The notes under the pieces are model-generated. The model ran no database searches, was not told the DNA's origin, and was given only the letters and a program-made list of their open reading frames with translations. Below are positions 4,125 to 42,836 of a stretch of DNA of 64,000 nt, in pieces; positions within the stretch are counted from its first letter, which is position 1, and the number at the start of each line of letters is the position of its first letter. The DNA lies in the IMG/VR virus record IMGVR_UViG_3300043418_000072, positions 124,001 to 188,000 of that record; one strand, written 5' to 3'. Made by a program: the position numbers and the translations under genes.

Positions 4125-4593
4125 TGTGTTCTTTCGTTAAGTTGCATACCATTTGAAAGTGCTCGTATGCTTGTCGCACACTTTCATGCTGCATTAGGTT
4201 CTCTGCTTCTCGGGTCATGACTTTAACTGCATCTTCGCAGGCTTCGCGGGCACTAGGCCATTCTAGTGTCTTTGCACTATCCCCAAACTCAGCAACTAGA
4301 TTATCCCAGGCTGCTTTCTGACTAGGAGTTAGCGGTGTGTTGCTTTGTTTTTGTTTCTGCATACGCAAGTCTGTGGCAGCAACAATGGCGCTACTGATAG
4401 CATCTTCTGCTAGCCGCCCTGCTGCAATCATTGCAGCATAGTTGGGATCAATATTGTATCTGCGACTAACCCCGCCGGGATAGCAAATAGTGAGATGTGA
4501 GCCTTTGGGTAATGCGTCCATTAGATCGCTATCGTACTCATGCACTGGCACATATCTGCGGCCAACTTTTTCGTAGAAGATCTTCTTAGTCAT
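4111..4593 (-). CDS. Hypothetical protein
   Basis: Start moved to MTKKIFYEK. Confidence 0.7.
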   Translation of the reverse strand: MTKKIFYEKVGRRYVPVHEYDSDLMDALPKGSHLTICYPGGVSRRYNIDPNYAAMIAAGRLAEDAISSAIVAATDLRMQKQKQSNTPLTPSQKAAWDNLVAEFGDSAKTLEWPSAREACEDAVKVMTREAENLMQHESVRQAYEHFQMVCNLTKEHNGNS

Positions 4594-4738
4594 TTTGTTG
4601 ATGCCTATATTCACGTTTAAACCAATACTTGTACTTGGCAAAATATTCCTGTGCAGTATATGGCAACACCTGGCCATAGCTTTCTAGCTCTGTTTGATGT
4701 TCGTACCATTTTTCCTGACACCATGCTCTAAAGTTCAT
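4586..4738 (-). CDS. Small hypothetical protein (50 aa, not in track)
   Basis: MNFRAWCQEKWYEH...; fills the gap. Confidence 0.6.
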   Translation of the reverse strand: MNFRAWCQEKWYEHQTELESYGQVLPYTAQEYFAKYKYWFKREYRHQQND

Positions 4739-4975
4739 TTACATTTCCTTTAGTAGTGCAACATGAGTGCGGGATAAACGTAAGATACTGTGATTAGCTT
4801 CTTCAAATCTAATTGGCAAATCTGTATGTACTAGGACTTGCTTATTTTCTTCGCGAACCACCATTGCAATGAAGGGAATTTTATTCCAGTGGCCAAAAAC
4901 TCTGTCGCCATAGTTGTACTTAGGCTTGGGCTTATCAGCATCACGTGCTGCAAAATATTCTGCGTAATTAGCCAT
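4739..4975 (-). CDS. Hypothetical protein
   Basis: TAATG-coupled ORF. Confidence 0.65.
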   Translation of the reverse strand: MANYAEYFAARDADKPKPKYNYGDRVFGHWNKIPFIAMVVREENKQVLVHTDLPIRFEEANHSILRLSRTHVALLKEM

Positions 4976-5232
4976 TATGCGCCACCTCTAAGAATGTACA
5001 TAGTAACGTCTTGGCTGTCAATAACACACATTTGCTCGCCGTACTTGTTATGCTCACCGCTGTACCATGAACGTTTTTCGACGTTGAGGATTTCAACCTT
5101 AACCATCTTAGGGTTAATCTTAACTACCTTGGCGATCTCCATGCCATTATGGTGCGCCACTGCAACGCAATCACCTAGTGCAATATCCCGACCTAGTTTA
5201 TCTTTGTGTACCGGAATTTCTTTAGCTGCCAT
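4975..5232 (-). CDS. Hypothetical protein (SH3/KOW-like)
   Basis: DKLGRDIALGDCVA pattern. Confidence 0.6.
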   Translation of the reverse strand: MAAKEIPVHKDKLGRDIALGDCVAVAHHNGMEIAKVVKINPKMVKVEILNVEKRSWYSGEHNKYGEQMCVIDSQDVTMYILRGGA

Positions 5233-5527
5233 GTGATGCTTTCAACATTTCAATTAGTTTTTCGGGTTTGACAATCTCGTGGACCATTTTGTGATCAGTC
5301 GGGATGCAACGGTATTCAATTACCTCCCACTCGCTCATGTCAGTGGCTCCATAATATTTGTTAATATGGCTTGTAATGTGGGCACGGAGTTTACCCAGGG
5401 TGTCCCAAGTCTTGCCACCTTTTTCGACCCAATAGCTGTTGTTGCCATCTGCGTTGGCATAAGTGCCGCCTTTGCTATAACGCTTGGTTACTCGGTGGCG
5501 TATTTTAAAAAATGTTTGTTCACTCAT
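5222..5527 (-). CDS. Hypothetical protein
   Basis: Start moved to MSEQTFFKIRH. Confidence 0.65.
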   Translation of the reverse strand: MSEQTFFKIRHRVTKRYSKGGTYANADGNNSYWVEKGGKTWDTLGKLRAHITSHINKYYGATDMSEWEVIEYRCIPTDHKMVHEIVKPEKLIEMLKASHGS

Positions 5528-5727
5528 CTGCGTTTCCTTTTGGCATCTGCTTTGCCAGTGAAATACCCAACTAACCAAAAACATATTGCAGTCCACAATA
5601 TCCAACCCACCATGTAACTTACTGGTACCATCATTGATCCACAACGTGATAATTAGAAAAGGGGTAAGTTTCTTGTAACCATTGTAACATATCTTCCTTA
5701 AAAGGTAAACGAATATTATCGTATTTG

Positions 5728-5934
5728 TTAGTTATGTACTTCATTGGGAATTCCAGCTTCGGTTGCACACTTGACACAAAGAGCCTTAGGACGAGGGCCG
5801 CCCATACCACTGATCACTTGATTGCATTGGCAACACGCGATCATCGCAGCGGTGTAGATGTAGCCCTTTTTGGGTTGTTGGATAGGTTGGTACTGGTCTT
5901 TGCCCACTCGATCGTAACCGATGATTTCACTCAT
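5728..5934 (-). CDS. Small Zn-finger-like protein
   Basis: CCQC...CVKC. Confidence 0.55.
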   Translation of the reverse strand: MSEIIGYDRVGKDQYQPIQQPKKGYIYTAAMIACCQCNQVISGMGGPRPKALCVKCATEAGIPNEVHN

Positions 5935-6224
5935 GATGCGTTACCTGCACTGTCGTAGATAGAGAAACGACCAGCCTCATCATTCCAATGACGAGTATCG
6001 TAATACTGTGCTGATACAGTATAGCCTAACAAGCCAAGATCCAAGCTCATGCCAGCGTGATCTTGTCTAATGTTCCAACGGAATGCAAAGCTCACAATGG
6101 TTGAATCACGATAGACTTCAAACTCCACAGCTTTATGCAGACGATCAATGACAGCACTGCGGTTGTAGATATTGTCCCAACGGTCACTGAATGGGTTGCG
6201 TAAATTAAAACTGAAACTAATCAT
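5931..6224 (-). CDS. Hypothetical protein
   Basis: ATGA-coupled to FGVEE junction. Confidence 0.7.
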   Translation of the reverse strand: MISFSFNLRNPFSDRWDNIYNRSAVIDRLHKAVEFEVYRDSTIVSFAFRWNIRQDHAGMSLDLGLLGYTVSAQYYDTRHWNDEAGRFSIYDSAGNAS

Positions 6225-6243
6225 TCTTCAACTCCGAAATGTT
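6221..6243 (-). repeat. FGVEE junction repeat TCATTCTTCAACTCC(GAAATGTT)
   Basis: 15-mer exact at 6221, 6499, 6768, 8299, 39800, 40120, 40692; variant at 40441. Confidence 0.95.
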
Positions 6244-6502
6244 CTTTCAATAATAATTGATAGTTATACATTACCTTGGCATACTCAGCCCCTCCTAGGT
6301 GAGAAAATCCACGATAGAGTTCAGCCTCTTCTTCTGCTTTAGCAAGACATTCCCTAACAATCAACTCTGCAAACTTTTTGTTATAAATTTCTCTACCCTC
6401 GGTAAAAGAATAAAGACGATTATGCACCCGTTCCAAGTGGGCAAGTTCATCATCAGCAAGTTGTTCTGCTACTCGTGCAAGTTCTAGAATTCGTTCGTTC
6501 AT
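6221..6502 (-). CDS. MNERI...HFGVEE family protein
   Basis: MNERILELA, FAELIVREC, KEHFGVEE. Confidence 0.8.
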   Translation of the reverse strand: MNERILELARVAEQLADDELAHLERVHNRLYSFTEGREIYNKKFAELIVRECLAKAEEEAELYRGFSHLGGAEYAKVMYNYQLLLKEHFGVEE

Positions 6503-6771
6503 TCTTCAACTCCGAAAGGTTTTTTATTTTCTGCTCTATTTTCTACAATCGAACTAAGTGTAAATCCTTCAAGACCCAGTGCTACTCTGATTGCACGATT
6601 TACTTTCCAAGTTTCTCGTTCAGTCAACCATATGCCCTTTCCTAAACTTGTGAAGTCGTGAGTTGTTCCGTGCCAAGTCCAGCAACCTCCACCGAGAGTC
6701 CAGTATTCGGTTCCTTTTTCTGGAGGGGTCTTTAATGGTGAAGGAACCTCTATTCCATTAATGTAGTTCAT
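6499..6771 (-). CDS. Hypothetical protein with FGVEE tail only
   Basis: Body unrelated to MNERI family. Confidence 0.7.
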   Translation of the reverse strand: MNYINGIEVPSPLKTPPEKGTEYWTLGGGCWTWHGTTHDFTSLGKGIWLTERETWKVNRAIRVALGLEGFTLSSIVENRAENKKPFGVEE

Positions 6772-6989
6772 TCTTCAACTCCGAAATGTTGTTTAATCTC
6801 GCAAATCATAGTATAACCAGGACCAGACTTTTTACCTTGTCCATAATAGTCCCCAACAATGTCAACACATTCCCTAACAATCAACTCGGCGAACATTTCC
6901 ATATGATGGTCAAGAAAATTTTTATCGTCCGCCTCGTCAAATGCCATACAATAAGCCTGTTCAGCAAGTTCTCGAATTCGTTCGTTCAT
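6768..6989 (-). CDS. MNERI...HFGVEE family protein
   Basis: MNERIRELAEQA, FAELIVREC. Confidence 0.8.
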   Translation of the reverse strand: MNERIRELAEQAYCMAFDEADDKNFLDHHMEMFAELIVRECVDIVGDYYGQGKKSGPGYTMICEIKQHFGVEE

Positions 6990-7150
6990 TAGTAACATTC
7001 CTCAACTGTGACAGTATGTCCGAGGTATTCCAACAATTTTTTGATACCTTCAGTTCCCATGTCTTCATCATTGTGGTCCCAGCTGAACCGTTTGCCATCT
7101 ACGTTTACTGTCCATCCATCACAGTATTGCTCAATCTCAATATCTTTCAT
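6989..7150 (-). CDS. Small hypothetical protein (53 aa, not in track)
   Basis: MKDIEIEQYCDGW...; coupled both ends. Confidence 0.65.
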   Translation of the reverse strand: MKDIEIEQYCDGWTVNVDGKRFSWDHNDEDMGTEGIKKLLEYLGHTVTVEECY

Positions 7151-7641
7151 GCTTGCAACTCCTTAAACCACGCTTCGCACTTTTCCCAAGTCGTGTAAAC
7201 ATGAGCGATACCGCCTGCTGCAATCCACTCACTGCAATTACTGTGTCGGTCATCAATTAAGATGTCAGTTGGGTGCTTGACATAACGATACTTGTCATGG
7301 CTAAAAGGGCCCAGGAACACAGGGATGCCGGGAAAGTGCTTGTCTGCCCACCATACTTTATCTTGTGCAGCAAAGGGCACACTGTAGTCATGTGGCAGAG
7401 CTGACAAGAATCGCAGTGTTCCGCCTGTTTCCTGCGTAAGTGCTTGGCAGTAAGCGACTAAGTCATGTGCGCCTGGCTTCAATGGCAAGTTCAAGTAAAA
7501 GCGTTCGTCCTCTTTAAGACGATCCCAATCCTTTTGCGGAATACGTTCACCAATAGTGTCGTCCCATGTCATACCAAGAATGTTTTGTGCGTGGACTTTC
7601 CAATCGCAAACCACATCGTCCATGTCTAAATAAATGTTCAT
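7147..7641 (-). CDS. HAD-family 5'(3')-deoxyribonucleotidase
   Basis: YLDMDDV, FLSALP, DKVWW, LIDD. Confidence 0.85.
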   Translation of the reverse strand: MNIYLDMDDVVCDWKVHAQNILGMTWDDTIGERIPQKDWDRLKEDERFYLNLPLKPGAHDLVAYCQALTQETGGTLRFLSALPHDYSVPFAAQDKVWWADKHFPGIPVFLGPFSHDKYRYVKHPTDILIDDRHSNCSEWIAAGGIAHVYTTWEKCEAWFKELQA

Positions 7642-7650
7642 TTGTTTTCC

Positions 7651-7929
7651 TTAAATTGTTTTCCACTTGTGCATTTCGCACACGCTATGCTCGTCTTCCA
7701 TGAAGGTGATCTTCTTCTCACCTATGTCGGCGCCCATCGCATAGCAACCCCACCCTGCGGTTTGTGTAATAGGACCTTTCATGCGGCCGCCACTCATAGT
7801 ATTCCAAGGATGTCGTGTAACTTCAAATTGATAGTCGCAGTTGCAGCAACACCGCCCTTTGGTATTACCATCTTCTGCTTTCCACCCTTTGTAACAGAGT
7901 TTCACTGGTAGCCCTTCTTTAACATCCAA
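7651..7929 (-). CDS. Cys-rich hypothetical protein
   Basis: CCCNC, GWGC, CEMH. Confidence 0.6.
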   Translation of the reverse strand: MDVKEGLPVKLCYKGWKAEDGNTKGRCCCNCDYQFEVTRHPWNTMSGGRMKGPITQTAGWGCYAMGADIGEKKITFMEDEHSVCEMHKWKTI

Positions 7930-8144
7930 ACCAACACTTGCTGTTGATCCAGTTTAGCAATATCCTTGCTGTGTTTGCTAACAGATTTCGCATTGGGATT
8001 ATCCACAATCTTCATACGCACCTGGCCGCTACCGTTTTCGTACTTAGTAGTACCCACAGCTTTGACCTTGTAGATATTGCTGTAGAAGACCACAAAGTCA
8101 TCTGCTTTAATTTCTTGGTCAATAACGTCAGTAATGGGATTCAT
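7902..8144 (-). CDS. Hypothetical protein
   Basis: Resembles 4975..5232 (D..D+V N-terminus, QQVLVWML tail). Confidence 0.6.
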   Translation of the reverse strand: MNPITDVIDQEIKADDFVVFYSNIYKVKAVGTTKYENGSGQVRMKIVDNPNAKSVSKHSKDIAKLDQQQVLVWMLKKGYQ

Positions 8145-8302
8145 AATAGCTCTGCTTCAATAGTGCTCTTGACTATAGAGAGCAAACTTTGAAAGGGCGC
8201 AATGAACTTGCTTTTACCATGCACAGCCGCATCTACTGTAGGGAACGGACCTGCTTCGATACCCTCTGAACTGACTAGATAATATACTTGATAGGTTTTC
8301 AT
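8141..8302 (-). CDS. Small hypothetical protein (53 aa, not in track)
   Basis: MKTYQVYYLV...; starts at FGVEE junction. Confidence 0.65.
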   Translation of the reverse strand: MKTYQVYYLVSSEGIEAGPFPTVDAAVHGKSKFIAPFQSLLSIVKSTIEAELL

Positions 8303-8526
8303 TCTTCAACTCCGAAATGTTCATTCAGCACCATTGCCCAGTCCAAGTCACTGCGTCCAATAAACTCGGGAGAGTTAAGATATTGACCACATTCCCAAAC
8401 AATCAATTTGGCGAACTTTCCACGGACGATGCTGTGATAGATATCATTGTATCGGTCGTTGACCGGCACTCGGCTATCAGCATAGGCAATAGCCTCAAGT
8501 TCAAGTTGTTTGATTCGTTCGTTCAT
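8299..8526 (-). CDS. MNERI...HFGVEE family protein
   Basis: MNERIKQLE, FAKLIVWEC, EHFGVEE. Confidence 0.8.
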   Translation of the reverse strand: MNERIKQLELEAIAYADSRVPVNDRYNDIYHSIVRGKFAKLIVWECGQYLNSPEFIGRSDLDWAMVLNEHFGVEE

Positions 8527-8729
8527 CAGTACTTCCTCAATTCTTTTATATCTAGCAAGTTGCAGTTGCCGCAATGCCTGGCTTGGTAGTCAACTGTCCA
8601 TACACCTTCTTTGCGGGCTTTTGGATCGTGGTACTTGGTCCAATTATGCCACCCAATGCGACACCAAAAACTTGTTGCCAGCAAAGGCTCGTCCTTTAGA
8701 GCCCGCATGGTGTTTTCTGCTTCATTCAC
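8526..8729 (-). CDS. Small Cys/His Zn-binding phage protein
   Basis: FWCRIGWHNW...HCGNC. Confidence 0.6.
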   Translation of the reverse strand: MNEAENTMRALKDEPLLATSFWCRIGWHNWTKYHDPKARKEGVWTVDYQARHCGNCNLLDIKELRKY

Positions 8730-9459
8730 AGTGTGATGTTCCTTGTAGCGCATCAGGTACAACCCAGTCCGTTGGCACATCAGTGACTTCAACCAAGCCA
8801 GCAGGTGCTCCACCAAGTTGGCGCCAAGCAAATGCACGGTCTTGATTTTCTTTCTGAATCCAGAGTTGTTTAGACTGTTCTTCCCACATCACAGGAAAGT
8901 CAGCAGCCCACAAGCTCAAGTCGTAGCTGAGACTTTTTCCGCCTCCGCCACCTGATCCAGTACAGATAGGAGAGTCTTCGAAGTAGTCACTGCCAAAGCC
9001 GGTCGAACTTGTTACGCTGTAAGTGATTCGGCCGCGCCAGCCCGCATAGCCCGTAGGCTTGCCTTTGTTATGTTCACTTCGGCGATCAAAGTTAGTAACA
9101 CCTCCACGCGGGCAAGAGTGACTGTTGCTAAGTTCGTTAACAAAGTGCAACCCAGACAGTTTCAACCCAATCAGCTGATCGTCTTTCTTGGGAAAATTGC
9201 TGCGTTTGCGCCAGCTATTGCGCTGGATCATGTTGTCACGGAAGAAGCTCCAATGATCAATGATAAACTGTTGCAGCTCATCAAATGATGCAACCTGTCC
9301 CATTGTGTCTAGGAACACTTCGCGGTCTGCTGCACGTTTTTCTAAGCGGCGCACTTGTGCTCGTGCAGCGCCAAGTTTGCGAAGGTGAGTAGTGTACTTG
9401 GCTTTGTCTTCAAACAACTTGCCATCTGCATCACTTTTCCAAACAAGAACTTGACTCAT
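8722..9459 (-). CDS. Hypothetical protein
   Basis: 245-aa ORF with GAGG RBS downstream of promoter. Confidence 0.8.
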   Translation of the reverse strand: MSQVLVWKSDADGKLFEDKAKYTTHLRKLGAARAQVRRLEKRAADREVFLDTMGQVASFDELQQFIIDHWSFFRDNMIQRNSWRKRSNFPKKDDQLIGLKLSGLHFVNELSNSHSCPRGGVTNFDRRSEHNKGKPTGYAGWRGRITYSVTSSTGFGSDYFEDSPICTGSGGGGGKSLSYDLSLWAADFPVMWEEQSKQLWIQKENQDRAFAWRQLGGAPAGLVEVTDVPTDWVVPDALQGTSHCE

Positions 9460-9488
9460 GTGCTACCTCACTTTGCTGCTATGTGTAT

Positions 9489-31833: not shown

Positions 31834-32051
31834 AACAATCCAAACAGTGTTGCATCTTCATCCCGATAAAAACGAATCGCCCATCGTTCGTCGCCATATC
31901 TGCCGGGCCCTTTGTTAACAATAGCAACACGGACGATGCAGGAACGTTCTTGAGGAAAGTGTGCGTCAAGCCACTTTTGTAGAGTTTCCATAGAGAACGT
32001 GCGACTGCCATTCATTAAGGTTGGGTATGGAATTTCAAGCAACTGCTGCAC
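31824..32051 (-). CDS. W-cassette
   Basis: Ends DEDATLFGLLWQ. Confidence 0.8.
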   Translation of the reverse strand: MQQLLEIPYPTLMNGSRTFSMETLQKWLDAHFPQERSCIVRVAIVNKGPGRYGDERWAIRFYRDEDATLFGLLWQ

Positions 32052-32391
32052 CTTGCCTTAAATAGTACCAAGCCAAGCGACTTTCTAATAAGTCATAAAA
32101 TGCTCTAGCTTCGTGTTTGTGAAAAAACACAACTCCCCCAACCACATACATGTCTTCCCATCCGTATGTCATATCAGACCGTTGAAAATAATTTTTTTCG
32201 CTAATCCACAGTGTTTCTAGTTCGCCATTGTTTAGCGTAATGCCCAGGCCAACTTCACGGCATCCAATGTCTCGGAACAGAAGATCAACTAACTTGTCTC
32301 GCTGTCTAGCATTATGTGCAAAGTTATTCTCAGCCCATGTCACTAACCAAGTGTTGTTAGGAAGATCTGTGAGTTTAAAAGGATTAGACAT
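32035..32391 (-). CDS. Hypothetical protein within array
   Basis: No clear W tail. Confidence 0.7.
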   Translation of the reverse strand: MSNPFKLTDLPNNTWLVTWAENNFAHNARQRDKLVDLLFRDIGCREVGLGITLNNGELETLWISEKNYFQRSDMTYGWEDMYVVGGVVFFHKHEARAFYDLLESRLAWYYLRQGAAVA

Positions 32392-32392
32392 G

Positions 32393-32674
32393 CTATGCCC
32401 ATTTCAAACTAAACATTAACAGATCGCTTTCGCGGCGGAATACAAAGATCAAATCTGAGATATCTTCAAGATTGTCATCGTTGTCGTAGTACTCTTCTTC
32501 CTCTTCGTCGCTGCCTGGAACTAGTACTTCTTCATAGCAGTACCAATCTTCGGCGCCCAGCCATGTATTGTTTGCATGTCGCTTGCTACCAGGGCCAACG
32601 TTAGCGTTGAGCCATGCTTCGATTTGATCTAATTGATCGTGATGCTTGTGTGCTAGTTTAAGTTTATAACTCAT
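32393..32674 (-). CDS. W-cassette with acidic insert
   Basis: WLNANVGP, ends MFSLKWA-TAG. Confidence 0.8.
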   Translation of the reverse strand: MSYKLKLAHKHHDQLDQIEAWLNANVGPGSKRHANNTWLGAEDWYCYEEVLVPGSDEEEEEYYDNDDNLEDISDLIFVFRRESDLLMFSLKWA

Positions 32675-32940
32675 GTGAATTTCATTACTAAAAATGTATA
32701 GGCTTTTGTAGCTTCTTCTAAGTTACGGTATTTCCAGTGTGTGCCAGCTTGCCCGCTGCGGCAGCGAGTTGGGTCAATCACATCGCGAACTTGCTCGGGG
32801 AAACTTTTCTCCCCTGCAGGTCGTTCTCGGTCCATCCAGTAATCATATGTCATCTCGACACGATAATGCACCTTGTCGCTTTTGCGATGGCGCCATTTGA
32901 TTAATCGGAAATTCTCGCCGCGGTGGATAATATTGTCCAT
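32671..32940 (-). CDS. W-cassette, variant tail
   Basis: EEATKAYTFLVMKF. Confidence 0.6.
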   Translation of the reverse strand: MDNIIHRGENFRLIKWRHRKSDKVHYRVEMTYDYWMDRERPAGEKSFPEQVRDVIDPTRCRSGQAGTHWKYRNLEEATKAYTFLVMKFT

Positions 32941-32941
32941 A

Positions 32942-33418
32942 TCATTCAGTTCCCAAAATATTCCACATACCCAATTGCTCTTTGAGATGTCTATTCTCTG
33001 CTTGTACCTTGTCAATTACTTCGTGAGCTTTTTCAGCTTCTCTAACTGCGTAAAGGTGATTGGATTTTGCAGAGTCAATTGCCCGCTGCGCATCTACTAG
33101 AAGTTCTGTAACGGTGCGTCGACTTAACTTATCAAGTTCTTCACGAGCATCCGCTAAATCCATTTCGGCTACCGCACGGTCATCTTCTGCGTAGGCAACC
33201 ATCTTTTGCAAGTGGGTGATGTAATCTCCGGGGTAGTAGTCTTGGTGATCGTCTGTAAAGACCCATGTGTTAGGATCCATGCCTGCTTCGACTAAATCAC
33301 CAACAAGCCCACCGTTAGGTGCAGACAGCATGTTGATTAATCGTTTGACCAATGGATCAGTGCTAGTCAAATCCAAGTAGCGTAGCAGCTCTACGTCAGA
33401 TAGATGATTTAGATTCAT
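32942..33418 (-). CDS. Coiled-coil hypothetical protein
   Basis: Heptad-like C-terminal half. Confidence 0.7.
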   Translation of the reverse strand: MNLNHLSDVELLRYLDLTSTDPLVKRLINMLSAPNGGLVGDLVEAGMDPNTWVFTDDHQDYYPGDYITHLQKMVAYAEDDRAVAEMDLADAREELDKLSRRTVTELLVDAQRAIDSAKSNHLYAVREAEKAHEVIDKVQAENRHLKEQLGMWNILGTE

Positions 33419-33725
33419 GTTTTAAAATCTCGAATAGTGTTGCATATTCAACCCAGGGTTCCATGTGAAAGCCTTTGCCCCACACTGCCCAGAATCGTTG
33501 TTTGTAAACAGTGCGTAACCAAATGCGATTACCACCTATTGTTTTAACTGGCCAAAGTGCAAACGTCTTGCGCCATGGGTAGCAGTCAGGCCCGTTGTAA
33601 ATTCGTTCAGTTATGTCCAACTCCACAGTCTCCGATCCTATTAGCAATGGCGCAATGCCTGTTGGGTTCTTGTCCCACTTAAGGCGATGTTCTCCGATTC
33701 GGCCATTTTTAAGACGAACTTTCAT
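33396..33725 (-). CDS. Hypothetical protein
   Basis: WRKTFALWPVKT. Confidence 0.65.
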   Translation of the reverse strand: MKVRLKNGRIGEHRLKWDKNPTGIAPLLIGSETVELDITERIYNGPDCYPWRKTFALWPVKTIGGNRIWLRTVYKQRFWAVWGKGFHMEPWVEYATLFEILKHESKSSI

Positions 33726-34006
33726 TAATACGAATGTGTTACCGACTCAGTATAGATTTGTTGTAGTAGATGGATTCTACCTGCGTACCGTAATTGTAAC
33801 ATACATTCACCTTTATCGTCAAATGTGGTTAGTTTTATAACCCCGGGCGAGCTGCGGTAGTGATAGACCTGCCCGCTGGTTTCAATACGCTGATGCTCAC
33901 CTTGCTGGGCGTCTAGTTGTATGCCATTGTTTTTGCAGTAGTCTACATCAGACTGGTCGGGGATAACATTGTGATCCAACACCCAAATTCTTACTATAGT
34001 TAACAT
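33725..34006 (-). CDS. W-cassette-like variant
   Basis: MLQLRY; similar to 48754..49047. Confidence 0.6.
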   Translation of the reverse strand: MLTIVRIWVLDHNVIPDQSDVDYCKNNGIQLDAQQGEHQRIETSGQVYHYRSSPGVIKLTTFDDKGECMLQLRYAGRIHLLQQIYTESVTHSY

Positions 34007-34263
34007 ACACTATCCGCAAAACTCAGAGCAAACATAATAGCAGCTTGTTCCCATTCAAATTGAAATGTAGTGTATTCACTATCCCAAGTTTTTGTGCCTC
34101 CACGCCAATCAATGTAGTAGCGTTTGAAATAGCCCTTATCGCCTGTTGGATAGTCGTCGCACCACTTCATCATAGCATTGACTTCAGGCGAGTTCTTTTT
34201 AATACGCACCTTATATCTAAAGTCGGGGTACTGATTCCCGCCACCGCCGTAAAATAATTCCAT
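34000..34263 (-). CDS. W-cassette
   Basis: KWCDDY, FEWEQAAIMFALSF. Confidence 0.75.
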   Translation of the reverse strand: MELFYGGGGNQYPDFRYKVRIKKNSPEVNAMMKWCDDYPTGDKGYFKRYYIDWRGGTKTWDSEYTTFQFEWEQAAIMFALSFADSVC

Positions 34264-34481
34264 TAGCTCCACCTCAACACAAACATTGTAGCATCTTCTT
34301 CCCTGCGAAATTTAATCCATCCACCATGGCTATCCCAAGTGCCATTACCTAATGCTAGTCCCGGGTGACCGAATGTGGTCCAGCACCATCCGTATATTTC
34401 GCTCATCTCTGGACCTTGTGGACTGTAGTACATTTCCCACTCGTAGTATCGGTCCGGGCGATGTTTGAATTTAATATTCAT
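34263..34481 (-). CDS. W-cassette
   Basis: WCWTTFG, ends EEDATMFVLRWS. Confidence 0.8.
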   Translation of the reverse strand: MNIKFKHRPDRYYEWEMYYSPQGPEMSEIYGWCWTTFGHPGLALGNGTWDSHGGWIKFRREEDATMFVLRWS

Positions 34482-34897
34482 TACACACTCCAGTATAGAC
34501 TAAACATTACAGCATCTTGCTCATTGTTAAATGCAAAAAATAGAATGTTGTGGCTTAGACCCATGCACCCTTGCGTCCATTCGCCATCCCAACTCTTGTC
34601 AACTGGGAGGATATCTTCTCTCCATTTACCGGTGGCATTTGCTGCGCACCACGTGGTCATGTTATCAACTACGGTGATCCATCCTTGGCCATGCCGCCGT
34701 TCCAGTGGCACTGTGTCGTCAAACGGGACGAGGTAAGGGTAGCCACGATACACGTCCTTACGAATACTACCACCACGTGCGCAAAAATCAGGATCATTTA
34801 TGAGATCAAACTGGCGCTGAGTCCATCCCTTCTTCTTAAGGTAACGGGCATGTCGCCATGCTTGAAACCTACCTACCGTAGCGTGTAGTAACTTCAT
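34481..34897 (-). CDS. W-cassette with N-terminal extension
   Basis: Ends EQDAVMFSLYWSV. Confidence 0.75.
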   Translation of the reverse strand: MKLLHATVGRFQAWRHARYLKKKGWTQRQFDLINDPDFCARGGSIRKDVYRGYPYLVPFDDTVPLERRHGQGWITVVDNMTTWCAANATGKWREDILPVDKSWDGEWTQGCMGLSHNILFFAFNNEQDAVMFSLYWSV

Positions 34898-35084
34898 CTA
34901 GTGTTTTCTTTGCTATTTTTCCTGACGGATGATCTGGGTGCATACGTGCGATATCATCTAGTGCAGTCCACATCAACTCGTGTTCGTGTTGTTGCTGGTA
35001 TACCTTATCCCGCAAGCGACTGGCATCCATAATGCTTAGGACACCAGCAATTAACTTGGGAAGGATACGAGCAAGGAATTCCAA
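34869..35084 (-). CDS. Hypothetical protein
   Basis: Start uncertain; ends in TAG. Confidence 0.55.
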   Translation of the reverse strand: MEFLARILPKLIAGVLSIMDASRLRDKVYQQQHEHELMWTALDDIARMHPDHPSGKIAKKTLDEVTTRYGR

Positions 35085-35312
35085 TTATAAGTACTTCAAT
35101 CTAAACATTGTTTCTGCTGCGTCATTGAAGAAGTCTAAGTAGACAGTAGTGATGTAACCTGTTTGTTCTCGGTAAACCTGATGATGGCGGTCGGTGAATC
35201 CTAACTCACGCTTCATTACAGATCGCAAGAGCCAAACACTAGGCTTGTCTGCGTACTCAATTTTAATCTGAGCTCGGATCTTGCGCCACTCAGTATCGGT
35301 TAGTGTGATCAT
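35085..35312 (-). CDS. W-cassette
   Basis: Ends TMFRLKYL. Confidence 0.75.
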   Translation of the reverse strand: MITLTDTEWRKIRAQIKIEYADKPSVWLLRSVMKRELGFTDRHHQVYREQTGYITTVYLDFFNDAAETMFRLKYL

Positions 35313-35541
35313 ACTTTAACTTGAAAAAGGTTGCATCCTCATCTTTAAGTTTAGCAGTTACTCTGTAACGAAGAGAGTATGAGTGGTAATCGTTGCACTT
35401 GCTCCATTGCGGGGTTTCAATTGCATTAGCCATAACCCATTTCCCTGCATCACTTTGCTGCCATTCCCATAGAGGCCATGCGGCATAAAGGTCCGGGTCA
35501 TCAACATCCCCCACTGAAAATTCATGAACAGCTAGAGTCAC
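35290..35541 (-). CDS. W-cassette
   Basis: DEDATFFKLKY. Confidence 0.75.
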   Translation of the reverse strand: MTLAVHEFSVGDVDDPDLYAAWPLWEWQQSDAGKWVMANAIETPQWSKCNDYHSYSLRYRVTAKLKDEDATFFKLKYDHTNRY

Positions 35542-35720
35542 CGCCATTTTAATGCAAATAGTGTAGCATCAGAGGGACTAGAGAAATCAAACCTATACGT
35601 GGGATTGTTACCCAGCATACTGTTTAAGTCTATTGTCCATCCCTTAATACCAAATTGTTGTCTGCACCAGCCGCCCGCCTCAAGCGCCTTATCGGCACCA
35701 TTAATTGTGATAGAGTTCAT
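35538..35720 (-). CDS. W-cassette (first of array 1)
   Basis: WCRQQFG, ends LFALKWR. Confidence 0.8.
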   Translation of the reverse strand: MNSITINGADKALEAGGWCRQQFGIKGWTIDLNSMLGNNPTYRFDFSSPSDATLFALKWR

Positions 35721-35726
35721 AGTACT

Positions 35727-35755
35727 ATTATACACTAAATGCCTTTATGCGTCAA
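35727..35755 (-). promoter_or_regulatory. sigma70-type promoter heading W-array 1
   Basis: TTGACG-17-TATAAT. Confidence 0.8.
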
Positions 35756-36129
35756 AGTGATGTATTCTTGAGAGTATCCCAAGTTTTCATCTTTTCCTTG
35801 ATCTCTAATTCCAACTTGCGGTATTCGTCACCTAACCGTTTTAGTTCTGCCCATTCGGTTTCGAGTGAGACATCGGGTTTCAGCATGGCCAACCTTGATT
35901 CAAGGGCCTCTAGCGTATCCTTGAGACTCTTGCCGTTCATAACAATGTCTGCCTGTTCTCCGTTTAGCGTAATAGTCGCTTGCTGCGTAACTGTCATTGG
36001 ATTAGCGGCAGTGGTCCATGTGGTATTAGAGTATCCATTTGATCCACTAACTGAAAATGGATTAGCGACAGTAGTTGCGCCAGCAAATAAGTTGCCGGTA
36101 TGCTTGTGATTATTTAAAATGTATGCCAA
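35752..36129 (-). CDS. Hypothetical protein
   Basis: TTG start after GAGG; C-terminal coiled coil. Confidence 0.7.
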   Translation of the reverse strand: MAYILNNHKHTGNLFAGATTVANPFSVSGSNGYSNTTWTTAANPMTVTQQATITLNGEQADIVMNGKSLKDTLEALESRLAMLKPDVSLETEWAELKRLGDEYRKLELEIKEKMKTWDTLKNTSL

Positions 36130-36141
36130 AATTTACCTCGT

Positions 36142-36187
36142 AAAAAAGCCTATACCGCAGTATAGGCTTTGTGTTAACTAAAGTCAA
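36142..36187 (-). terminator. Intrinsic terminator overlapping a sigma70 promoter
   Basis: AAAGCCTATAC/GTATAGGCTTT stem plus U-run; TTGACT-17-TATACT at 36159-36187. Confidence 0.75.
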
Positions 36188-36191
36188 CAGG

Positions 36192-37034
36192 TTAGATATC
36201 AAATCCAAATGTTGGATCAAAGTCCTCTGCTTGCTGCTCATAGTTCTTGTAACCACGTGGGTTGCAAATAACACGAGTGTCACCAACCATGTAATCAAAC
36301 TGATGGTGTGTATGACCGTGTGTCCAAACTTTAATCTCAGGGTTGTCTAATATAAACTCACTGAGATCGCTGCTGTACGCACCATTCATAATGACATCGT
36401 CTGCGTAACGCGGATGAGTGCTCAACTTGCTCGGGCTGTGATGTGTACATACAACCACTGGCTTGTTACGGCCACTCATGCGGTTCTCACTCAGCTGCTG
36501 AGTAAAGTATTGTTTGGTCTTAATGTGCTCAGTTACAGTCTTTTCGGGCTGCAAGCGATGGTAAGCACCATTAGTCTCGTTCAGCATAGTTACCTGACGA
36601 TAGTCATTCATCATGCTCTTCATGTGGTACAAGGTAAGCTGATCATGGTTGTTCATGTCAGTCCACAGCGTTCCGCCTATAAACAACACACCGTCAATTT
36701 CGTACGTTTCTTTTTCAAGCAGATGCACGTTAGACGGCAACTGGCTCTTGATGTGATCATAGGTCTTATGGAACTGATAACCATAGTGCTCATGGTTGCC
36801 CATTACGTAAATGACTTCGCGGTACTTAGCGCACTCTTCCTCTAGGAAGCGACTGCACCGATCGGGGCGCTGGTCTTTACGCTCGTGCTCTAGCAATACC
36901 ATTGCTGGGTTGTAATCTTCTTTCTTGAAACGCTTGGCTTCGCAAACGTCGCCGCTGAGAATAAGTACATCGCCGCCGGGCAACGTCAAGTCTGCAAAAT
37001 CCAAGTGTAAATCACTCATTACGCTAACACGCAT
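36192..37034 (-). CDS. Calcineurin-like metallophosphoesterase
   Basis: SDLH, SGD, GNHE, HHSP, HGHTH. Confidence 0.9.
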   Translation of the reverse strand: MRVSVMSDLHLDFADLTLPGGDVLILSGDVCEAKRFKKEDYNPAMVLLEHERKDQRPDRCSRFLEEECAKYREVIYVMGNHEHYGYQFHKTYDHIKSQLPSNVHLLEKETYEIDGVLFIGGTLWTDMNNHDQLTLYHMKSMMNDYRQVTMLNETNGAYHRLQPEKTVTEHIKTKQYFTQQLSENRMSGRNKPVVVCTHHSPSKLSTHPRYADDVIMNGAYSSDLSEFILDNPEIKVWTHGHTHHQFDYMVGDTRVICNPRGYKNYEQQAEDFDPTFGFDI

Positions 37035-37057
37035 GATAGTTCCTTTAGTAATGTGCT

Positions 37058-37086
37058 ATTGTAGCACTATTCCAATTTCTTGTCAA
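37058..37086 (-). promoter_or_regulatory. sigma70-type promoter
   Basis: TTGACA-17-TACAAT. Confidence 0.8.
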
Positions 37087-37087
37087 G

Positions 37088-37112
37088 AGAAAAGGCCCTT
37101 GCGAGCCTTTTT
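37088..37112 (-). terminator. Intrinsic terminator
   Basis: AAAGGCTC-GCAA-GGGCCTTT, GNRA loop. Confidence 0.75.
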
Positions 37113-37126
37113 GGAGCAGTCTAGAA

Positions 37127-37414
37127 TTAGACCAAACCTTGTGCCATTGCTTTGTAAGCGATAGCAACCATTTTGCGGCTAGCTTCGCCGTAACGGTATT
37201 CAGTGACCTGAACGCCATTGCCTGCTTTACGGCTCTTGCCGTAAATGGCATAACCACGTTGACGGATTGCACTGATGGTAGCAGTTGGGTTAGCAATGCT
37301 GAAACGCTTGGCAATTTGTGCCTCGCTCAAAACTTCCTTGTCTAAGACCAATGCTTTGAACAATTTGCCTTGCTTAGTAGTTAAATCGAAACGCTTTAAG
37401 TTGATAGTTGTCAT
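37127..37414 (-). CDS. Winged-helix/HTH DNA-binding protein
   Basis: LSEAQIAKRF..NPTATISAIRQRGY. Confidence 0.65.
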   Translation of the reverse strand: MTTINLKRFDLTTKQGKLFKALVLDKEVLSEAQIAKRFSIANPTATISAIRQRGYAIYGKSRKAGNGVQVTEYRYGEASRKMVAIAYKAMAQGLV

Positions 37415-37504
37415 AATGTAATTTCCTTTAGTATTTGTTGTGTCTTGCACAACTGATTGTAGTATAGCAAAGTGCTATCTATAAGAACAAGAGTTATGGT
37501 AATC

Positions 37505-38068
37505 TTACTCGTTCTTGCTATCCAATGCAGCCCATCCTAGGCGGTGTAGGTCTTCTCGGATCTCGTCGGTAACACGACTTTCGGACACGTAGGCTTGTGA
37601 TTGCTTGTGATAGGCCAACTGCTCTTCTGTGTAATCTGCTAGTTCTTCGGGCGTTGCATCTCCGTTGCGAATACCGCTGCAATACCAATCAATGTAGTCG
37701 CCTTTTTCCTGCATATCGGCAACAATACCGCCGGCATAACGCCAAGAACAGCCCCAGGTCTTGCCTGTTAAGATAGGCCAAGTGTCTAGCTTCTGGAAGT
37801 CATTGTTGCACATGGCAGCATAGAGATTCTGTGCATACACATCATCGCTACGCACCTTTTCAAGGATCCAATCTGTTGTACGAAGATCGTACTCCATGTT
37901 GTCCTTTTGCCATTCGGGGTCTTGAGTTCTCAGGTCAGCTTTATGGTTCCACTCTTCGTAATGTTCAATCATTTGCAGGGCATCTTCGTCCGTTGGATCA
38001 ACCAACAGTTTGTCACGATAACTTTGAGCCTGAAAAGTATTACGCTCGGGACTTTTGCTAATAGTCAT
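37505..38068 (-). CDS. Conserved hypothetical protein
   Basis: YAQNLYAAMCNN, SWRYAGGIVAD, DYIDWYCSG. Confidence 0.75.
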   Translation of the reverse strand: MTISKSPERNTFQAQSYRDKLLVDPTDEDALQMIEHYEEWNHKADLRTQDPEWQKDNMEYDLRTTDWILEKVRSDDVYAQNLYAAMCNNDFQKLDTWPILTGKTWGCSWRYAGGIVADMQEKGDYIDWYCSGIRNGDATPEELADYTEEQLAYHKQSQAYVSESRVTDEIREDLHRLGWAALDSKNE

Positions 38069-38274
38069 TGCTTAGTTAGAAAGATAGTGCCATCATCACG
38101 AACATCCCACACCAGAGTATCGCCGATTGCCCATCCTTGTGCAGCAAGTAGTTCATCAGGAATGGGCATAACCAGGTCGTCCCCGTCTTCTTGTAAAGTA
38201 ACCACCCAAGAGTTCTTGCCAGTCTGTTCCCATTCTGGAGTTAGATCGCTTGGGTCAATCTTGCTTGTGGTCAT
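38065..38274 (-). CDS. AbrB/MazE-like protein
   Basis: DLVMPIPDELL..GW.IGDTL. Confidence 0.65.
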   Translation of the reverse strand: MTTSKIDPSDLTPEWEQTGKNSWVVTLQEDGDDLVMPIPDELLAAQGWAIGDTLVWDVRDDGTIFLTKQ

Positions 38275-38275
38275 A

Positions 38276-38503
38276 TCAGTCTTTGCTTACTGGCAAGCAG
38301 GTGCGGGCAGGAACTACACTAGTGTAGGTATCACCGATCTTTTCGTATAGCTTGCCTTCGATGCAGTACCAAACAGGCCCAGGGCGACTGTCTGCGTACT
38401 CCTTTGCAGCAGAGCCAATGGCCCAACCAATTATGGAACCACATCCCATTGAGACCACAATAAATGCGATCACATATAAAAAGCCTGCTACTGCGTCTTT
38501 CAT
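38276..38503 (-). CDS. Membrane protein
   Basis: N-terminal TM. Confidence 0.65.
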   Translation of the reverse strand: MKDAVAGFLYVIAFIVVSMGCGSIIGWAIGSAAKEYADSRPGPVWYCIEGKLYEKIGDTYTSVVPARTCLPVSKD

Positions 38504-38802
38504 GCAATCACCCGAATATGAGTAACGTTTTCAGTTCTAAAACTGCGCCATTCGCTTTTGTCTAAACACCAGGCACTAAGAGTCTTGTGGTTTAGCAATC
38601 GTGTTTCGTGTAGCTTAGTTGCATCACGAGCAGGCAATGCCTCTGCCTTTAGGGTACAAGGCATTGTTCGCACACTTCCATCTACTTTAGTGAAAGTGAC
38701 TTCGCATTGGTGTTCCCACAAGAGCTTTTGAATCTCTTTGTAACGGGTACCCAGCGCAAACTCATCGTCACCTAATGGGCCGAAAGTGTATTCTAGACTC
38801 AC
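38500..38802 (-). CDS. Sm/SH3-like (WYL_2-like) protein
   Basis: VTFTKVDGSVRTMPCTL, WRSFR. Confidence 0.7.
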   Translation of the reverse strand: MSLEYTFGPLGDDEFALGTRYKEIQKLLWEHQCEVTFTKVDGSVRTMPCTLKAEALPARDATKLHETRLLNHKTLSAWCLDKSEWRSFRTENVTHIRVIA

Positions 38803-38966
38803 TTAGAGTCCTTACGTGCGCCCTTTTGGCGAGCGTCAGCTTCAGCAATCTTTGTGAAGCTGCGGAGAAATGCTCCACGAACTTGCTTGTCTACAATAGT
38901 AGACGATGCCATCTTAACCAAGCTGGAGAGTTTCACAGCTTTAGAATCGTAACCTCTGCATGTCAT
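38799..38966 (-). CDS. Small basic protein (55 aa, not in track)
   Basis: MTCRGYDSKAVKLS...; AAGGA RBS. Confidence 0.6.
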   Translation of the reverse strand: MTCRGYDSKAVKLSSLVKMASSTIVDKQVRGAFLRSFTKIAEADARQKGARKDSK

Positions 38967-39016
38967 AATGTTTTCCTTTAAAAATGTATTATATAGGGAT
39001 GTTGAATTGTTGTCTA

Positions 39017-39675: not shown

Positions 39676-39803
39676 TCTTTATCTCCTTTAACACAAGAAA
39701 TTTTGTCCGGGCTATACATCAACACAAAGTTACCAATATTAAATGATCCTAAAATTGATAGGCATAACACAAATCCGCCAATTGCTGCAAGGAAGGTTTT
39801 CAT
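39672..39803 (-). CDS. Small membrane protein (43 aa, not in track)
   Basis: Starts at FGVEE junction. Confidence 0.6.
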   Translation of the reverse strand: MKTFLAAIGGFVLCLSILGSFNIGNFVLMYSPDKISCVKGDKE

Positions 39804-42831: not shown

Positions 42832-42836
42832 CCATT

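What the first reader, a model, noticed from the sequence alone, without database searches (positions are those of the whole stretch)
6221..8526. FGVEE junction repeat: one DNA word acts as protein tail, RBS and start/stop, and is shared by unrelated genes
Seen: TTCGGAGTTGAAGAATGA (F-G-V-E-E-stop, GGAG RBS, ATGA overlap) has 7 exact 15-mer copies plus one variant, in two clusters 33 kb apart. Six genes are MNERI paralogues, but 6499 and 39800 share only the tail. Inferred: the junction is a portable coupling module and a microhomology site for shuffling small genes.
Basis: partly seen in the sequence, partly recalled or inferred. Interest (0 to 1): 0.65.

Follow-up and report, generated by a model that had tools for sequence, protein, structure and literature searches.

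The report
Dual-coding gene-junction repeat in jumbo phage
The repeated 18-base word is the DNA-frozen end of a huge uncharacterised family of small phage genes: it encodes the protein's last five residues and also the ribosome site and start codon of whatever gene follows, and it is one of three conserved blocks at which these phages swap gene pieces and whole small genes.

Summary
The repeat is real: 8 copies on the minus strand (0.05 expected by chance), 10 in the 354-kb T4-like jumbo phage genome. Five copies, not six, end MNERI-family genes. One (40120) is non-coding and two end unrelated genes. The word is widespread. The family has at least 1,448 members, only in uncultured phages, with no Pfam family or known fold.

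In a sample ascertained independently of the tail, 111 FGVEE tails use GGA 109, GTT 107, GAA 110 and 111, and TGA 108 times. GGAG lies 7 nt before an ATG that overlaps the stop, and about 100 unrelated downstream genes start there.

Tails on non-family genes look like recombination or deletion scars: extra KEH codons, a tail-less homologue, 13-codon collapsed genes. The 39800 gene natively ends KKFG, so only the spacer coincides.

Against a close relative, cassette swaps break exactly at the word, and 7 of 8 copies lie at or in variable segments. Across all loci, however, breakpoint enrichment over other gene junctions is not robust.

All three conserved blocks of the family have frozen synonymous sites, and the two variable segments reassort freely.

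Verdict: a dual-coding translational junction and recombination linker, a translational analogue of T4 PeSLs, not an autonomous mobile module.

The parts
6221..6238 (-). 18-mer copy: tail (HFGVEE-stop) of family gene 6221-6502, and SD plus ATG of the 97-aa gene 5931-6224
   Evidence: It is the right-hand breakpoint of the three-genes-versus-one replacement against the close relative.
6221..6502 (-). MNERI-family gene B (93 aa)
   Evidence: HMM E 1.9e-31
6499..6516 (-). 18-mer copy: tail (KKPFGVEE-stop) of the non-family 90-aa gene, and SD plus ATG of family gene B. With the following ACGAACGAAT it forms the full tail plus N-block linker.
6499..6771 (-). Non-family gene (90 aa, MNYING...) with its last ~9 codons derived from a family gene
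   Evidence: Not hit by the family HMM. It gives a weak match to phrog_18768 over residues 3-60 only. Most of its 13 homologues end (K/E)HFGVEE, and two end ..IENE-stop without the tail. In L244 the tail-less form is followed by a 31-aa ORF and then a family gene.
6768..6785 (-). 18-mer copy: tail of family gene A, and SD plus ATG of the 90-aa gene
6768..6989 (-). MNERI-family gene A (73 aa from the MNERI start; the ORF runs to 6998)
   Evidence: HMM E 2.5e-33. The left breakpoint against the relative falls just after its conserved N-block.
8299..8316 (-). 18-mer copy: tail of family gene 8299-8526, and SD plus ATG of the 53-aa gene 8141-8302
   Evidence: In the relative the family gene is replaced by an unrelated 52-aa gene without the word, and homology resumes at the ATGA.
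8299..8526 (-). MNERI-family gene (75 aa from the MNERI start)
   Evidence: HMM E 2e-29
14824..15003 (-). Divergent family paralogue without the word (MNEQIKALA...FAELVINEC...RELGIK)
   Evidence: HMM E 1.5e-4
39800..39817 (-). Variant copy (TTTGGAG...): tail (KKFGVEE-stop) of the 107-aa gene, and SD plus ATG of the 43-aa gene 39672-39803
   Evidence: The relative has TTTGGAGATGTAAAATGA at the same place.
39800..40123 (-). Non-family 107-aa gene whose family natively ends ..AEFERLSKKFG plus 1-4 variable residues
   Evidence: 61 homologues, of which only this one ends FGVEE
40120..40137 (-). Non-coding exact copy, 10 nt after the stop of the 98-aa gene: SD plus ATG of the 107-aa gene
   Evidence: It is the exact right-hand breakpoint of the cluster-2 cassette swap. 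In L043 the homologous gene reads in frame into ..SNFGVEE.
40148..40444 (-). Non-family 98-aa gene flanked by two copies of the word
40441..40458 (-). Variant copy TTTGGAGTTGAATAATGA: tail HFGVE-stop (TAA) of family gene 40444-40695, and SD plus ATG of the 98-aa gene
40444..40695 (-). MNERI-family gene (83 aa)
   Evidence: HMM E 3e-27. 1,448 relatives. AF2 model with pLDDT 87.
40692..40709 (-). 18-mer copy: tail of family gene 40692-40952, and SD plus ATG of family gene 40444-40695 (full linker)
   Evidence: It is the exact left-hand breakpoint of the cluster-2 cassette swap.
40692..40952 (-). MNERI-family gene (86 aa, MNKRI...)
   Evidence: HMM E 9e-28

Best explanation
The 18-mer is the 3'-terminal conserved block of a very large, uncharacterised, phage-only family of small modular proteins. 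Their layout is N-block MNERIKELAEQA, variable segment V1, mid-block KFAELIVREC, variable segment V2, tail IKEHFGVEE. The tail block is dual-coding. It specifies Phe-Gly-Val-Glu-Glu-stop. On the same strand it also supplies the Shine-Dalgarno GGAG, a 7-nt A/U-rich spacer and the ATG of the next cistron, with an ATGA stop/start overlap. Whatever gene sits downstream therefore gets a ready-made, unstructured translation-initiation site (shown from sequence; actual coupling is inferred). Because the block is identical in DNA among paralogues and among related phages, homologous recombination crosses over in it, as it does in the family's other two blocks. That crossing-over reassorts V1 and V2 and inserts, deletes and replaces whole small genes (shown by comparison; the enzymology is inferred). 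Deletions or fusions that remove a family gene's body must keep the tail to stay viable, because the downstream gene needs it. This leaves the word as a new C-terminus on an unrelated upstream gene (6499 gene), as a non-coding scar (40120) or as 10-20-codon remnants (inferred from homologue series). The 39800 gene reached a near-identical tail from its own native KKFG/TTTGGAG end, by convergence or by a short conversion.
For: Real repeat.
Family: HMM finds about 10 paralogues in the genome. There are at least 1,448 relatives, with no Pfam family. Atlas clusters are 100% viral. There are no hits in 50,697 GenBank phages. The only hits in prokaryote genomes are 18 small contigs of freshwater MAGs.
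Dual coding: in loci ascertained through the N and mid blocks only, 111 FGVEE tails use GGA 109, GTT 107, GAA 110 and 111, and TGA 108 times. Body usage is 27%, 41% and 76%. 191 of 206 family genes overlap or abut the next start. 168 of 181 junctions open a downstream ORF of 30 aa or more, in about 98 non-family clusters. GGAG with a 7-nt spacer is the modal SD geometry in this genome. There is no RNA structure at the junction. The non-coding copy and the FGVE-stop variants keep the nucleotides while changing the protein.
Recombination: against the closest relative, homology ends at the last base of the 40692 copy and resumes at the first base of the 40120 copy. The 8299 and 6221 copies are also breakpoints. 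7 of 8 copies are at or in variable segments, against 19 of 85 other junctions. V1 and V2 assort almost independently: a 43-member V1 cluster is joined to 40 V2 clusters.
Scars: KEH codons are retained upstream of the word in remnants. A tail-less homologue of the 6499 gene is followed by a family gene. Two collapsed genes read MNKRIKEHFGVEE and MNEQIKQHFGVEE.
Against: Across about 220 loci, breakpoint frequency at the word is not robustly higher than at other gene junctions (odds ratio 0.7 for HSPs of 400 nt or more, 2.4 at 250 nt and 85% identity). Gene-boundary breakpoints are general in these phages: 18 cassette indels in 42 kb, most of them at plain ATGA starts. SD/ATG dual coding does not explain frozen wobble sites in the spacer (GTT, first GAA). 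Still less does it explain the N and mid blocks, where G/C-ending codons such as GCC, GAG and AAG are fixed against the genes' own codon bias. The 107-aa family shows that an SD-bearing tail need not have a frozen spacer. The direction of the tail gain or loss in the 6499 gene family is not polarised.
Confidence: 0.7

Rival explanations
1. One reading: the junction is an autonomous portable coupling module that moves by itself between unrelated genes through microhomology, independent of any gene family.
For: The word ends two non-family genes and occurs once non-coding. About 6 further unrelated genes carry it in other phages. Cassette swaps break at it.
Against: 164 of 181 copies elsewhere end family genes. 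Non-family copies retain extra family codons (AAAGAACAT) or are truncated family ORFs. In cluster 1a the word disappears together with the family gene while the downstream gene stays. No copy was seen as a self-contained unit with its own ends. Enrichment of breakpoints across loci is weak.
Confidence: 0.1
2. The three frozen blocks, including the tail, are recognition sites for a dedicated protein or RNA. Candidates are a nuclease or recombinase that drives homing-like conversion, or an mRNA-binding or mRNA-cleaving regulator such as a RegB-type enzyme acting at GGAG. On this reading translation signals are secondary.
For: Frozen synonymous sites occur in the N and mid blocks, where no translation signal is expected, and include codons used against the body bias. 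Sub-words are shared between blocks: GAGTTGA in mid and tail, ATTAAAGAAC in N and tail. Some neighbouring wobble sites stay free, which argues for site-specific constraint rather than recency.
Against: There is no RegB homologue, although the control genomes did not ring either. No candidate enzyme was identified. The tail's frozen choices are all explained, or nearly so, by SD, ATG and an A/U-rich initiation region. No conserved RNA structure was found.
Confidence: 0.15
3. The tail is conserved only as a protein motif, and the DNA identity merely reflects recent duplication of paralogues.
For: H, F and G of the tail are at least 90% conserved as residues, and the AF2 model places them at the end of the last helix.
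Against: Codon choice is near-invariant across 107 unique genes whose variable segments fall into 169-200 unrelated clusters. The non-coding copy is conserved. FGVE-stop variants keep the nucleotides but change the protein. The Phe wobble site varies 70:30 next to frozen sites, so there has been time for change.
Confidence: 0.03
4. Chance or low-complexity repeat.
For: None.
Against: 8 copies found against 0.05 expected. The exact word is in more than 119 viral contigs, often in several copies.
Confidence: 0

Closest known systems
PeSL (promoter-early stem-loop) cassettes of T4-type phages (Arbiol et al. 2010, PMC2839356; Comeau et al. 2014, PMC4122927)
   Same: Both are short conserved expression signals repeated in hyperplastic regions of T4-superfamily genomes. 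This genome has a Gp23-like capsid gene. Both flank small ORFans. Insertions, deletions and replacements between close relatives break at them. The inserted gene arrives with a working expression signal.
   Different: PeSLs are about 100-bp intergenic transcription units, a sigma-70-like promoter plus a terminator hairpin. This word is 18-27 nt, lies inside a coding sequence, carries translation signals (SD, start, stop), has no promoter or hairpin and belongs to one gene family. Mini-circles were shown for PeSLs and could not be tested here.
Conserved-motif-mediated segment swapping in T-even adhesins (gp38 glycine-rich motifs between hypervariable segments; Trojet et al. 2011, PMC3157838)
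   Same: Both have conserved blocks that form the structural core and separate hypervariable segments, which are exchanged as independent modules. Here V1 and V2 reassort almost freely.
   Different: The protein family is different and of unknown function. Here the blocks are also frozen at synonymous sites, and the last block doubles as the next gene's ribosome site. Host-range relevance is unknown.
Ordinary translational coupling junctions in operons
   Same: GGAG lies 7 nt before an ATG that overlaps the upstream stop, and codon choice at the 3' end of the upstream gene is constrained by the downstream signal.
   Different: Normally each junction is idiosyncratic. Here one identical junction is reused hundreds of times, in front of about 100 unrelated genes and across many phages.
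A second junction family in the same window (...FxLRW(S/A)-stop, TTGAGGTGGTCATGA)
   Same: It forms tandem small paralogues whose last codons embed an SD (GAGGTG) and an ATGA overlap. Six of the 18 indels against the relative break at it.
   Different: It is an unrelated protein family and an unrelated word, and it was not surveyed outside this genome.

Membership tests
PeSL regulatory cassette | Strong sigma-70-like early promoter within the element | tested here: not met
   Promoter-like hits number 7 against 5.6 expected and 3 against 5.0 expected. Only two weak 9/12 hits touch a copy.
PeSL regulatory cassette | Stem-loop that acts as a terminator | tested here: not met
   No terminator-like site lies at any copy. 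The 91-nt folds around all 8 copies give z-scores of -0.45 to +1.1.
PeSL regulatory cassette | Intergenic location | tested here: not met
   7 of 8 copies lie inside a coding sequence.
PeSL regulatory cassette | Indel and replacement breakpoints between close relatives coincide with copies | tested here: met
   There are exact breakpoints at the 40692, 40120, 8299 and 6221 copies. 7 of 8 copies are at or in variable segments, against 19 of 85 other junctions. Across all loci the enrichment is not robust.
PeSL regulatory cassette | Excised mini-circles carrying one chimeric copy | not testable with these tools
Translational coupling junction | SD-like sequence 5-9 nt upstream of the downstream start, inside the upstream ORF | tested here: met
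   GGAG plus 7 nt plus ATG in all copies. 7 nt is the modal spacing genome-wide.
Translational coupling junction | Stop/start overlap, with a real ORF opening at that ATG | tested here: met
   8 of 8 in the window. 168 of 181 in other phages. 191 of 206 family genes overlap or abut the next start.
Translational coupling junction | Downstream translation depends on translation of the upstream gene | not testable with these tools
   This needs reporter or Ribo-seq experiments. The lack of an SD-sequestering structure suggests that independent initiation is also possible.
MNERI...FAELIVREC...HFGVEE protein family (unnamed) | Match to the family profile (N-block, mid-block, tail) | tested here: met
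   Met for the genes ending at 6221, 6768, 8299, 40441 and 40692 (E 1e-27 to 1e-33). Not met for the genes ending at 6499 and 39800, nor for the 98-aa gene upstream of 40120.
Modular hypervariable-segment proteins (gp38 GRM/HVS type) | Conserved motifs separating hypervariable segments that assort independently | tested here: met
   Alignment A1. There are 169 V1 and 200 V2 clusters. One V1 cluster is joined to 40 V2 clusters, and one V2 cluster to 6 V1 clusters.
Modular hypervariable-segment proteins (gp38 GRM/HVS type) | Sequence or fold homology to gp38, or a demonstrated specificity function | tested here: not met
   No Pfam, PHROG or PADLOC match. No fold match: Foldseek PDB E above 0.4, VIA best Z 4.5, BFVD only uncharacterised phage proteins. 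Function was not tested.

The most novel reading that the evidence does not exclude
The MNERI family may be a dedicated combinatorial cassette system of freshwater T4-like and jumbo phages. On this reading, three DNA-frozen linker blocks are maintained as crossover sites, by selection or by an unidentified conversion machinery. Phages would use them to reshuffle two hypervariable specificity segments of a small effector, and to plug neighbouring ORFans in and out. The tail linker would deliver a universal ribosome site, making it a translation-level counterpart of PeSL mini-cassettes. The hypervariable proteins would then probably be host-takeover or anti-defence factors under arms-race selection.
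Probability: 0.3. Interest if true: 0.75.

Novelty: new variant of a known kind. Interest (0 to 1): 0.58.

Why it matters
How large phages acquire and lose their many small ORFan genes without breaking expression is an open question. The only worked-out mechanism is the PeSL, a transcriptional cassette in T4-type phages. This finding suggests a translational equivalent. One identical, dual-coding junction is reused hundreds of times, so any gene placed behind it is expressed, and its sequence identity gives recombination a foothold.

The work also uncovers a very large, unannotated, virus-only protein family: at least 1,448 members, Atlas clusters of up to 1,662, and none in cultured phages. 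The family has two freely reassorting hypervariable segments and unexplained synonymous-site freezing in all three conserved blocks. It is a clear target for functional work such as anti-defence or host-takeover screens. It is also a clean natural system for measuring how much homology phage recombination needs. A second unrelated family in the same genome uses the same trick, so the principle may be general.

Tried and rejected
No other route was tried.
2. Near-identical DNA or family protein in GenBank phages: none found.
3. Function of the family: no Pfam, PHROG or PADLOC match. Foldseek PDB, VIA-align wide and BFVD gave no informative fold. The Atlas returned only hypothetical viral clusters.
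4. RegB-type cleavage at GGAG: no PF10715 hit, but the control genomes did not ring either, so this is uninformative.
5. SD-sequestering hairpin that would enforce coupling: none, z -0.45 to +1.1.
6. Promoter or terminator content, as in a PeSL: at background level.
7. Global breakpoint enrichment: the result depends on thresholds (odds ratio 0.7-3.7). The high values come from short HSPs that are just the family gene itself, so it is not counted as support.
8. Micro-conversion of the 39800 tail: 3 differences in 9 nt against the relative, compared with about 11% divergence in the flanks, gives P of about 0.07 by my binomial estimate. This is not significant and is not claimed.
9. The 90-aa gene in IMG/VR: only the identical phage was found, so its context was taken from the look-up of encoding contigs instead.
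10. Literature search for the motif strings found nothing relevant.

Full report
SETTING. The window is G000:C1:124001-188000 of a 354,098-bp IMG/VR virus record with 43.5% GC, which CheckV rates complete. Most genes are small and lie on the minus strand. The genome has a T4 Gp23-like capsid gene. The window holds an ATP-dependent DNA ligase, NAMPT, an NMNAT-NUDIX protein and an NT5C-like nucleotidase. It is therefore a T4-superfamily-like jumbo phage. It has no close GenBank relative.

OBSERVATION. TTCGGAGTTGAAGAATGA, allowing up to 3 mismatches, occurs 8 times, always on the minus strand. Shuffles give 0.05 expected.
- Six copies are exact: 6221, 6499, 6768, 8299, 40120 and 40692.
- The copy at 39800 begins TTT. 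The copy at 40441 reads TTTGGAGTTGAATAATGA.
- The genome holds two more copies outside the window.
- In every copy the ATG of GAATGA opens an ORF of 43-107 aa, and GGAG sits 7 nt upstream.
- That spacing is the commonest GGAG-to-ATG distance in this genome.

A profile built from five members finds about ten paralogues in the genome. Five of the eight copies are tails of such genes. The 40120 copy lies 10 nt behind the stop of an unrelated 98-aa gene, in a different frame, and is non-coding. The genes ending at 6499 and 39800 are not family members.

THE FAMILY. The word search returned at least 1,448 relatives from 8,000 scored candidates. All are hypothetical proteins without a Pfam family, on contigs of up to 387 kb. 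The other searches agree:
- Pfam, PHROGs and PADLOC give nothing.
- tblastn against 50,697 GenBank phages gives nothing.
- Atlas clusters are 100% viral and reach 1,662 members.
- Among 185,579 prokaryote species there are only 18 hits, all on small contigs of freshwater MAGs.
- An AF2 model is confident (pLDDT 87: helix, beta-hairpin, two helices). It has no informative structural neighbour.

The alignment shows a conserved N-block (MNERIKELAEQA), variable V1, mid-block (KFAELIVREC), variable V2 and tail (IKEHFGVEE). The protein's function stays unknown.

THE WORD ELSEWHERE. I examined 181 junctions in the loci fetched.
- The upstream ORF is a family member in 164 of them (91%).
- The other 17 are either non-coding or 10-20-codon remnants that still carry (A)AAGAACAT before the word, or about six unrelated genes fused in frame.
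- 168 junctions open a downstream ORF of at least 30 aa at the motif ATG.
- Those ORFs fall into about 98 non-family clusters plus the family itself.

SYNONYMOUS SITES. To avoid ascertainment through the word, I fetched loci through degenerate patterns for the N and mid blocks only. This gave 217 family ORFs in 78 loci, of which 111 end FGVEE.

| Tail position | Codon and count (of 111) | Body usage of that codon |
|---|---|---|
| Gly | GGA 109 | 27% |
| Val | GTT 107 | 41% |
| Glu (first) | GAA 110 | 76% |
| Glu (second) | GAA 111 | 76% |
| stop | TGA 108 | n/a |
| Phe | TTC 76, TTT 35 | free |

After removing identical genes the picture holds and extends upstream: CAT 95 of 96, GAA 45 of 45, AAA 50 of 57. 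The tail is therefore under nucleotide-level constraint.
- GGA plus the following G makes the SD.
- The last GAA plus TGA makes ATGA.
- The remaining frozen choices are all A/U-ending, as expected for an open initiation region.
- Folding shows no structure at the junction.

191 of 206 family genes overlap or abut the next start. The 15 that do not mostly lack the tail. Variants such as FGVE-stop keep GGAGTTGAA while changing the protein. The non-coding copy at 40120 is conserved. Its counterpart in L043 is read in frame as ..SNFGVEE.

NOT ONLY THE TAIL. The same test shows frozen synonymous sites in the other two blocks.

| Block | Codon | Count | Body usage |
|---|---|---|---|
| N-block | AAC | 119 of 130 | 34% |
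| N-block | CGA | 125 of 130 | 22% |
| N-block | CTT | 97 of 124 | 16% |
| Mid-block | GCC | 117 of 136 | 31% |
| Mid-block | GAG | 126 of 136 | 26% |
| Mid-block | TTG | 123 of 136 | 39% |
| Mid-block | AAG | 117 of 128 | 50% |

Nearby sites stay free: the mid-block Val is GTG 69 and GTT 47, and the Arg codon is mixed. Translation signals cannot explain the mid-block.

At the same time V1 and V2 assort almost independently. 262 unique proteins fall into 169 V1 and 200 V2 clusters. A 43-member V1 cluster is joined to 40 V2 clusters. A six-member V2 cluster is joined to six V1 clusters. The blocks are therefore crossover points. In tandem family genes, tail plus N-block form a linker of about 60 nt. 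Whether the freezing is selected, is a by-product of conversion, or marks a recognition site is unresolved.

BREAKPOINTS. One contig (IMGVR_UViG_3300046092_000062, 320,767 bp) is a close relative with flanks 85-91% identical.
- Cluster 2: homology ends at the last base of the 40692 copy and resumes at the first base of the 40120 copy. The window has a family gene plus the 98-aa gene. The relative has a novel 88-aa gene plus another family gene ending SRQFGVKR.
- Cluster 1b: the window's three genes (A, the 90-aa gene, B) correspond to one family gene in the relative. The left break falls just after the N-block and the right break at GAACAT plus the 6221 copy.
- Cluster 1a: the 8299 family gene is replaced by an unrelated 52-aa gene without the word, and homology resumes at the ATGA. 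The word therefore travels with the upstream family gene.
- The relative also carries an extra family gene, absent from the window, that is bounded by a 5-nt ATGAC repeat.

In total 7 of 8 copies lie at or inside variable segments, against 19 of 85 other junctions. The script counted 6 against 0, with Fisher p = 2.7e-4. I added the 39800 and 40441 copies by hand.

There are caveats.
- The 42 kb compared contain 18 cassette indels. Only 4 involve this family.
- Six involve a second family.
- The rest break at plain start codons with repeats of 4-8 nt.
- In an all-against-all comparison of about 220 loci, the break-to-through ratio at the word is not robustly higher than at other junctions. It is 0.074 against 0.102 for HSPs of at least 400 nt, and 0.216 against 0.102 at 250 nt and 85% identity.

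The word is therefore a good crossover site in a genome where gene boundaries are crossover sites in general. It is not a uniquely hot one.

THE TWO 'UNRELATED' GENES.
- The 107-aa gene (39800). All 61 homologues end ..AEFERLSKKFG followed by 1-4 variable residues, and only this one ends VEE. In DNA, TTTGGAG is native to that family, and the spacer differs from phage to phage. The close relative has GATGTAAAA where the window has GTTGAAGAA. This is independent use of Phe-Gly/GGAG as an SD-bearing tail. The extra identity in the window may be convergence or a short conversion. Three differences in 9 nt are not significant.
- The 90-aa gene (6499). Most of its 13 homologues end (K/E)HFGVEE, which is closer to the family consensus. 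Two end ..IENE-stop. In L244 that tail-less form is followed by a 31-aa ORF and then a family gene. DNA alignment places the added piece at about 27 nt (AAARAACMT plus the word). This fits an in-frame fusion to the last 8-9 codons of a family gene, though loss in the other direction is not excluded.

Two 13-codon ORFs, MNKRIKEHFGVEE in L119 and MNEQIKQHFGVEE in L154, look like family genes collapsed between the ATTAAAGAAC shared by the N-block and the tail.

INTERPRETATION. The best-supported account has three parts.
- The word is a dual-coding translational junction that belongs to the family's 3' end.
- Its DNA identity makes it, like the family's other blocks, a site of homologous exchange.
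- It survives deletions of the family gene because the next gene needs it, which leaves scars on neighbours.

It works like a PeSL but fails the PeSL definition: it has no promoter and no hairpin, and it is not intergenic. It resembles the motif and hypervariable-segment design of gp38 adhesins without any homology to them.

NOT DONE. Coupling, expression and present-day recombination are therefore inferences.

Noticed in passing
window 28362-31096 and 44459-46642, minus strand: A second junction repeat. 14 tandem small paralogues end ...F(x)LRW(S/A)-stop with TTGAGGTGGTCATGA, where GAGGTG is the SD and ATGA is the stop/start overlap. Six of the 18 indels against the close relative break at this junction.
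   Followed up: partly
window -4172..17036 and 31968..52750 versus L141 and L129: There are 18 whole-gene insertions, deletions or replacements of 140-850 nt in about 42 kb aligned with a relative that is 85-91% identical. Nearly all have breakpoints at a start codon or ATGA, with direct repeats of 4-8 nt, such as AATGATTC near 10925 and ATGAC near 10165.
   Followed up: partly
window 50391-50465, minus strand: ARAGORN calls a tRNA with anticodon CUA, labelled tRNA-Pyl, which is a potential amber suppressor. TAG is the rarest stop among crude gene calls: 39 TAG, 154 TGA and 278 TAA. No recoding was assumed anywhere in this work.
   Followed up: no
window 55583-55981, minus strand: ARAGORN calls a permuted tmRNA-like gene with tag peptide ANDSQFLMVA.
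   Followed up: no
window 50518-51921 and 52672-53691, minus strand: NAD salvage pair: a NAMPT (PF04095 and PF18127) and an NMN adenylyltransferase-NUDIX fusion (PF01467 and PF00293).
   Followed up: no
L119 around 2936-2977; L154 around 872-913: 13-codon ORFs MNKRIKEHFGVEE and MNEQIKQHFGVEE. These look like family genes collapsed between the ATTAAAGAAC shared by the N-block and the tail.
   Followed up: partly
window 27784-27867 and 29528-29707 (genome 151784-151867 and 153528-153707), minus strand: There are weak matches of the T4 Gp23 profile to short stretches of small ORFs, for example profile positions 5-32 (the N-terminal propeptide region) at E 8e-7. The main Gp23 match sits at the very end of the record (353941-354096), so the linear record is cut inside the capsid gene.
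   Followed up: no
family-wide (L151-L229): The mid-block KFAELIVREC is fixed as AAG TTC GCC GAG TTG ATT, using codons against the genes' own bias. It shares the 7-mer GAGTTGA with the tail. No explanation was found.
   Followed up: partly
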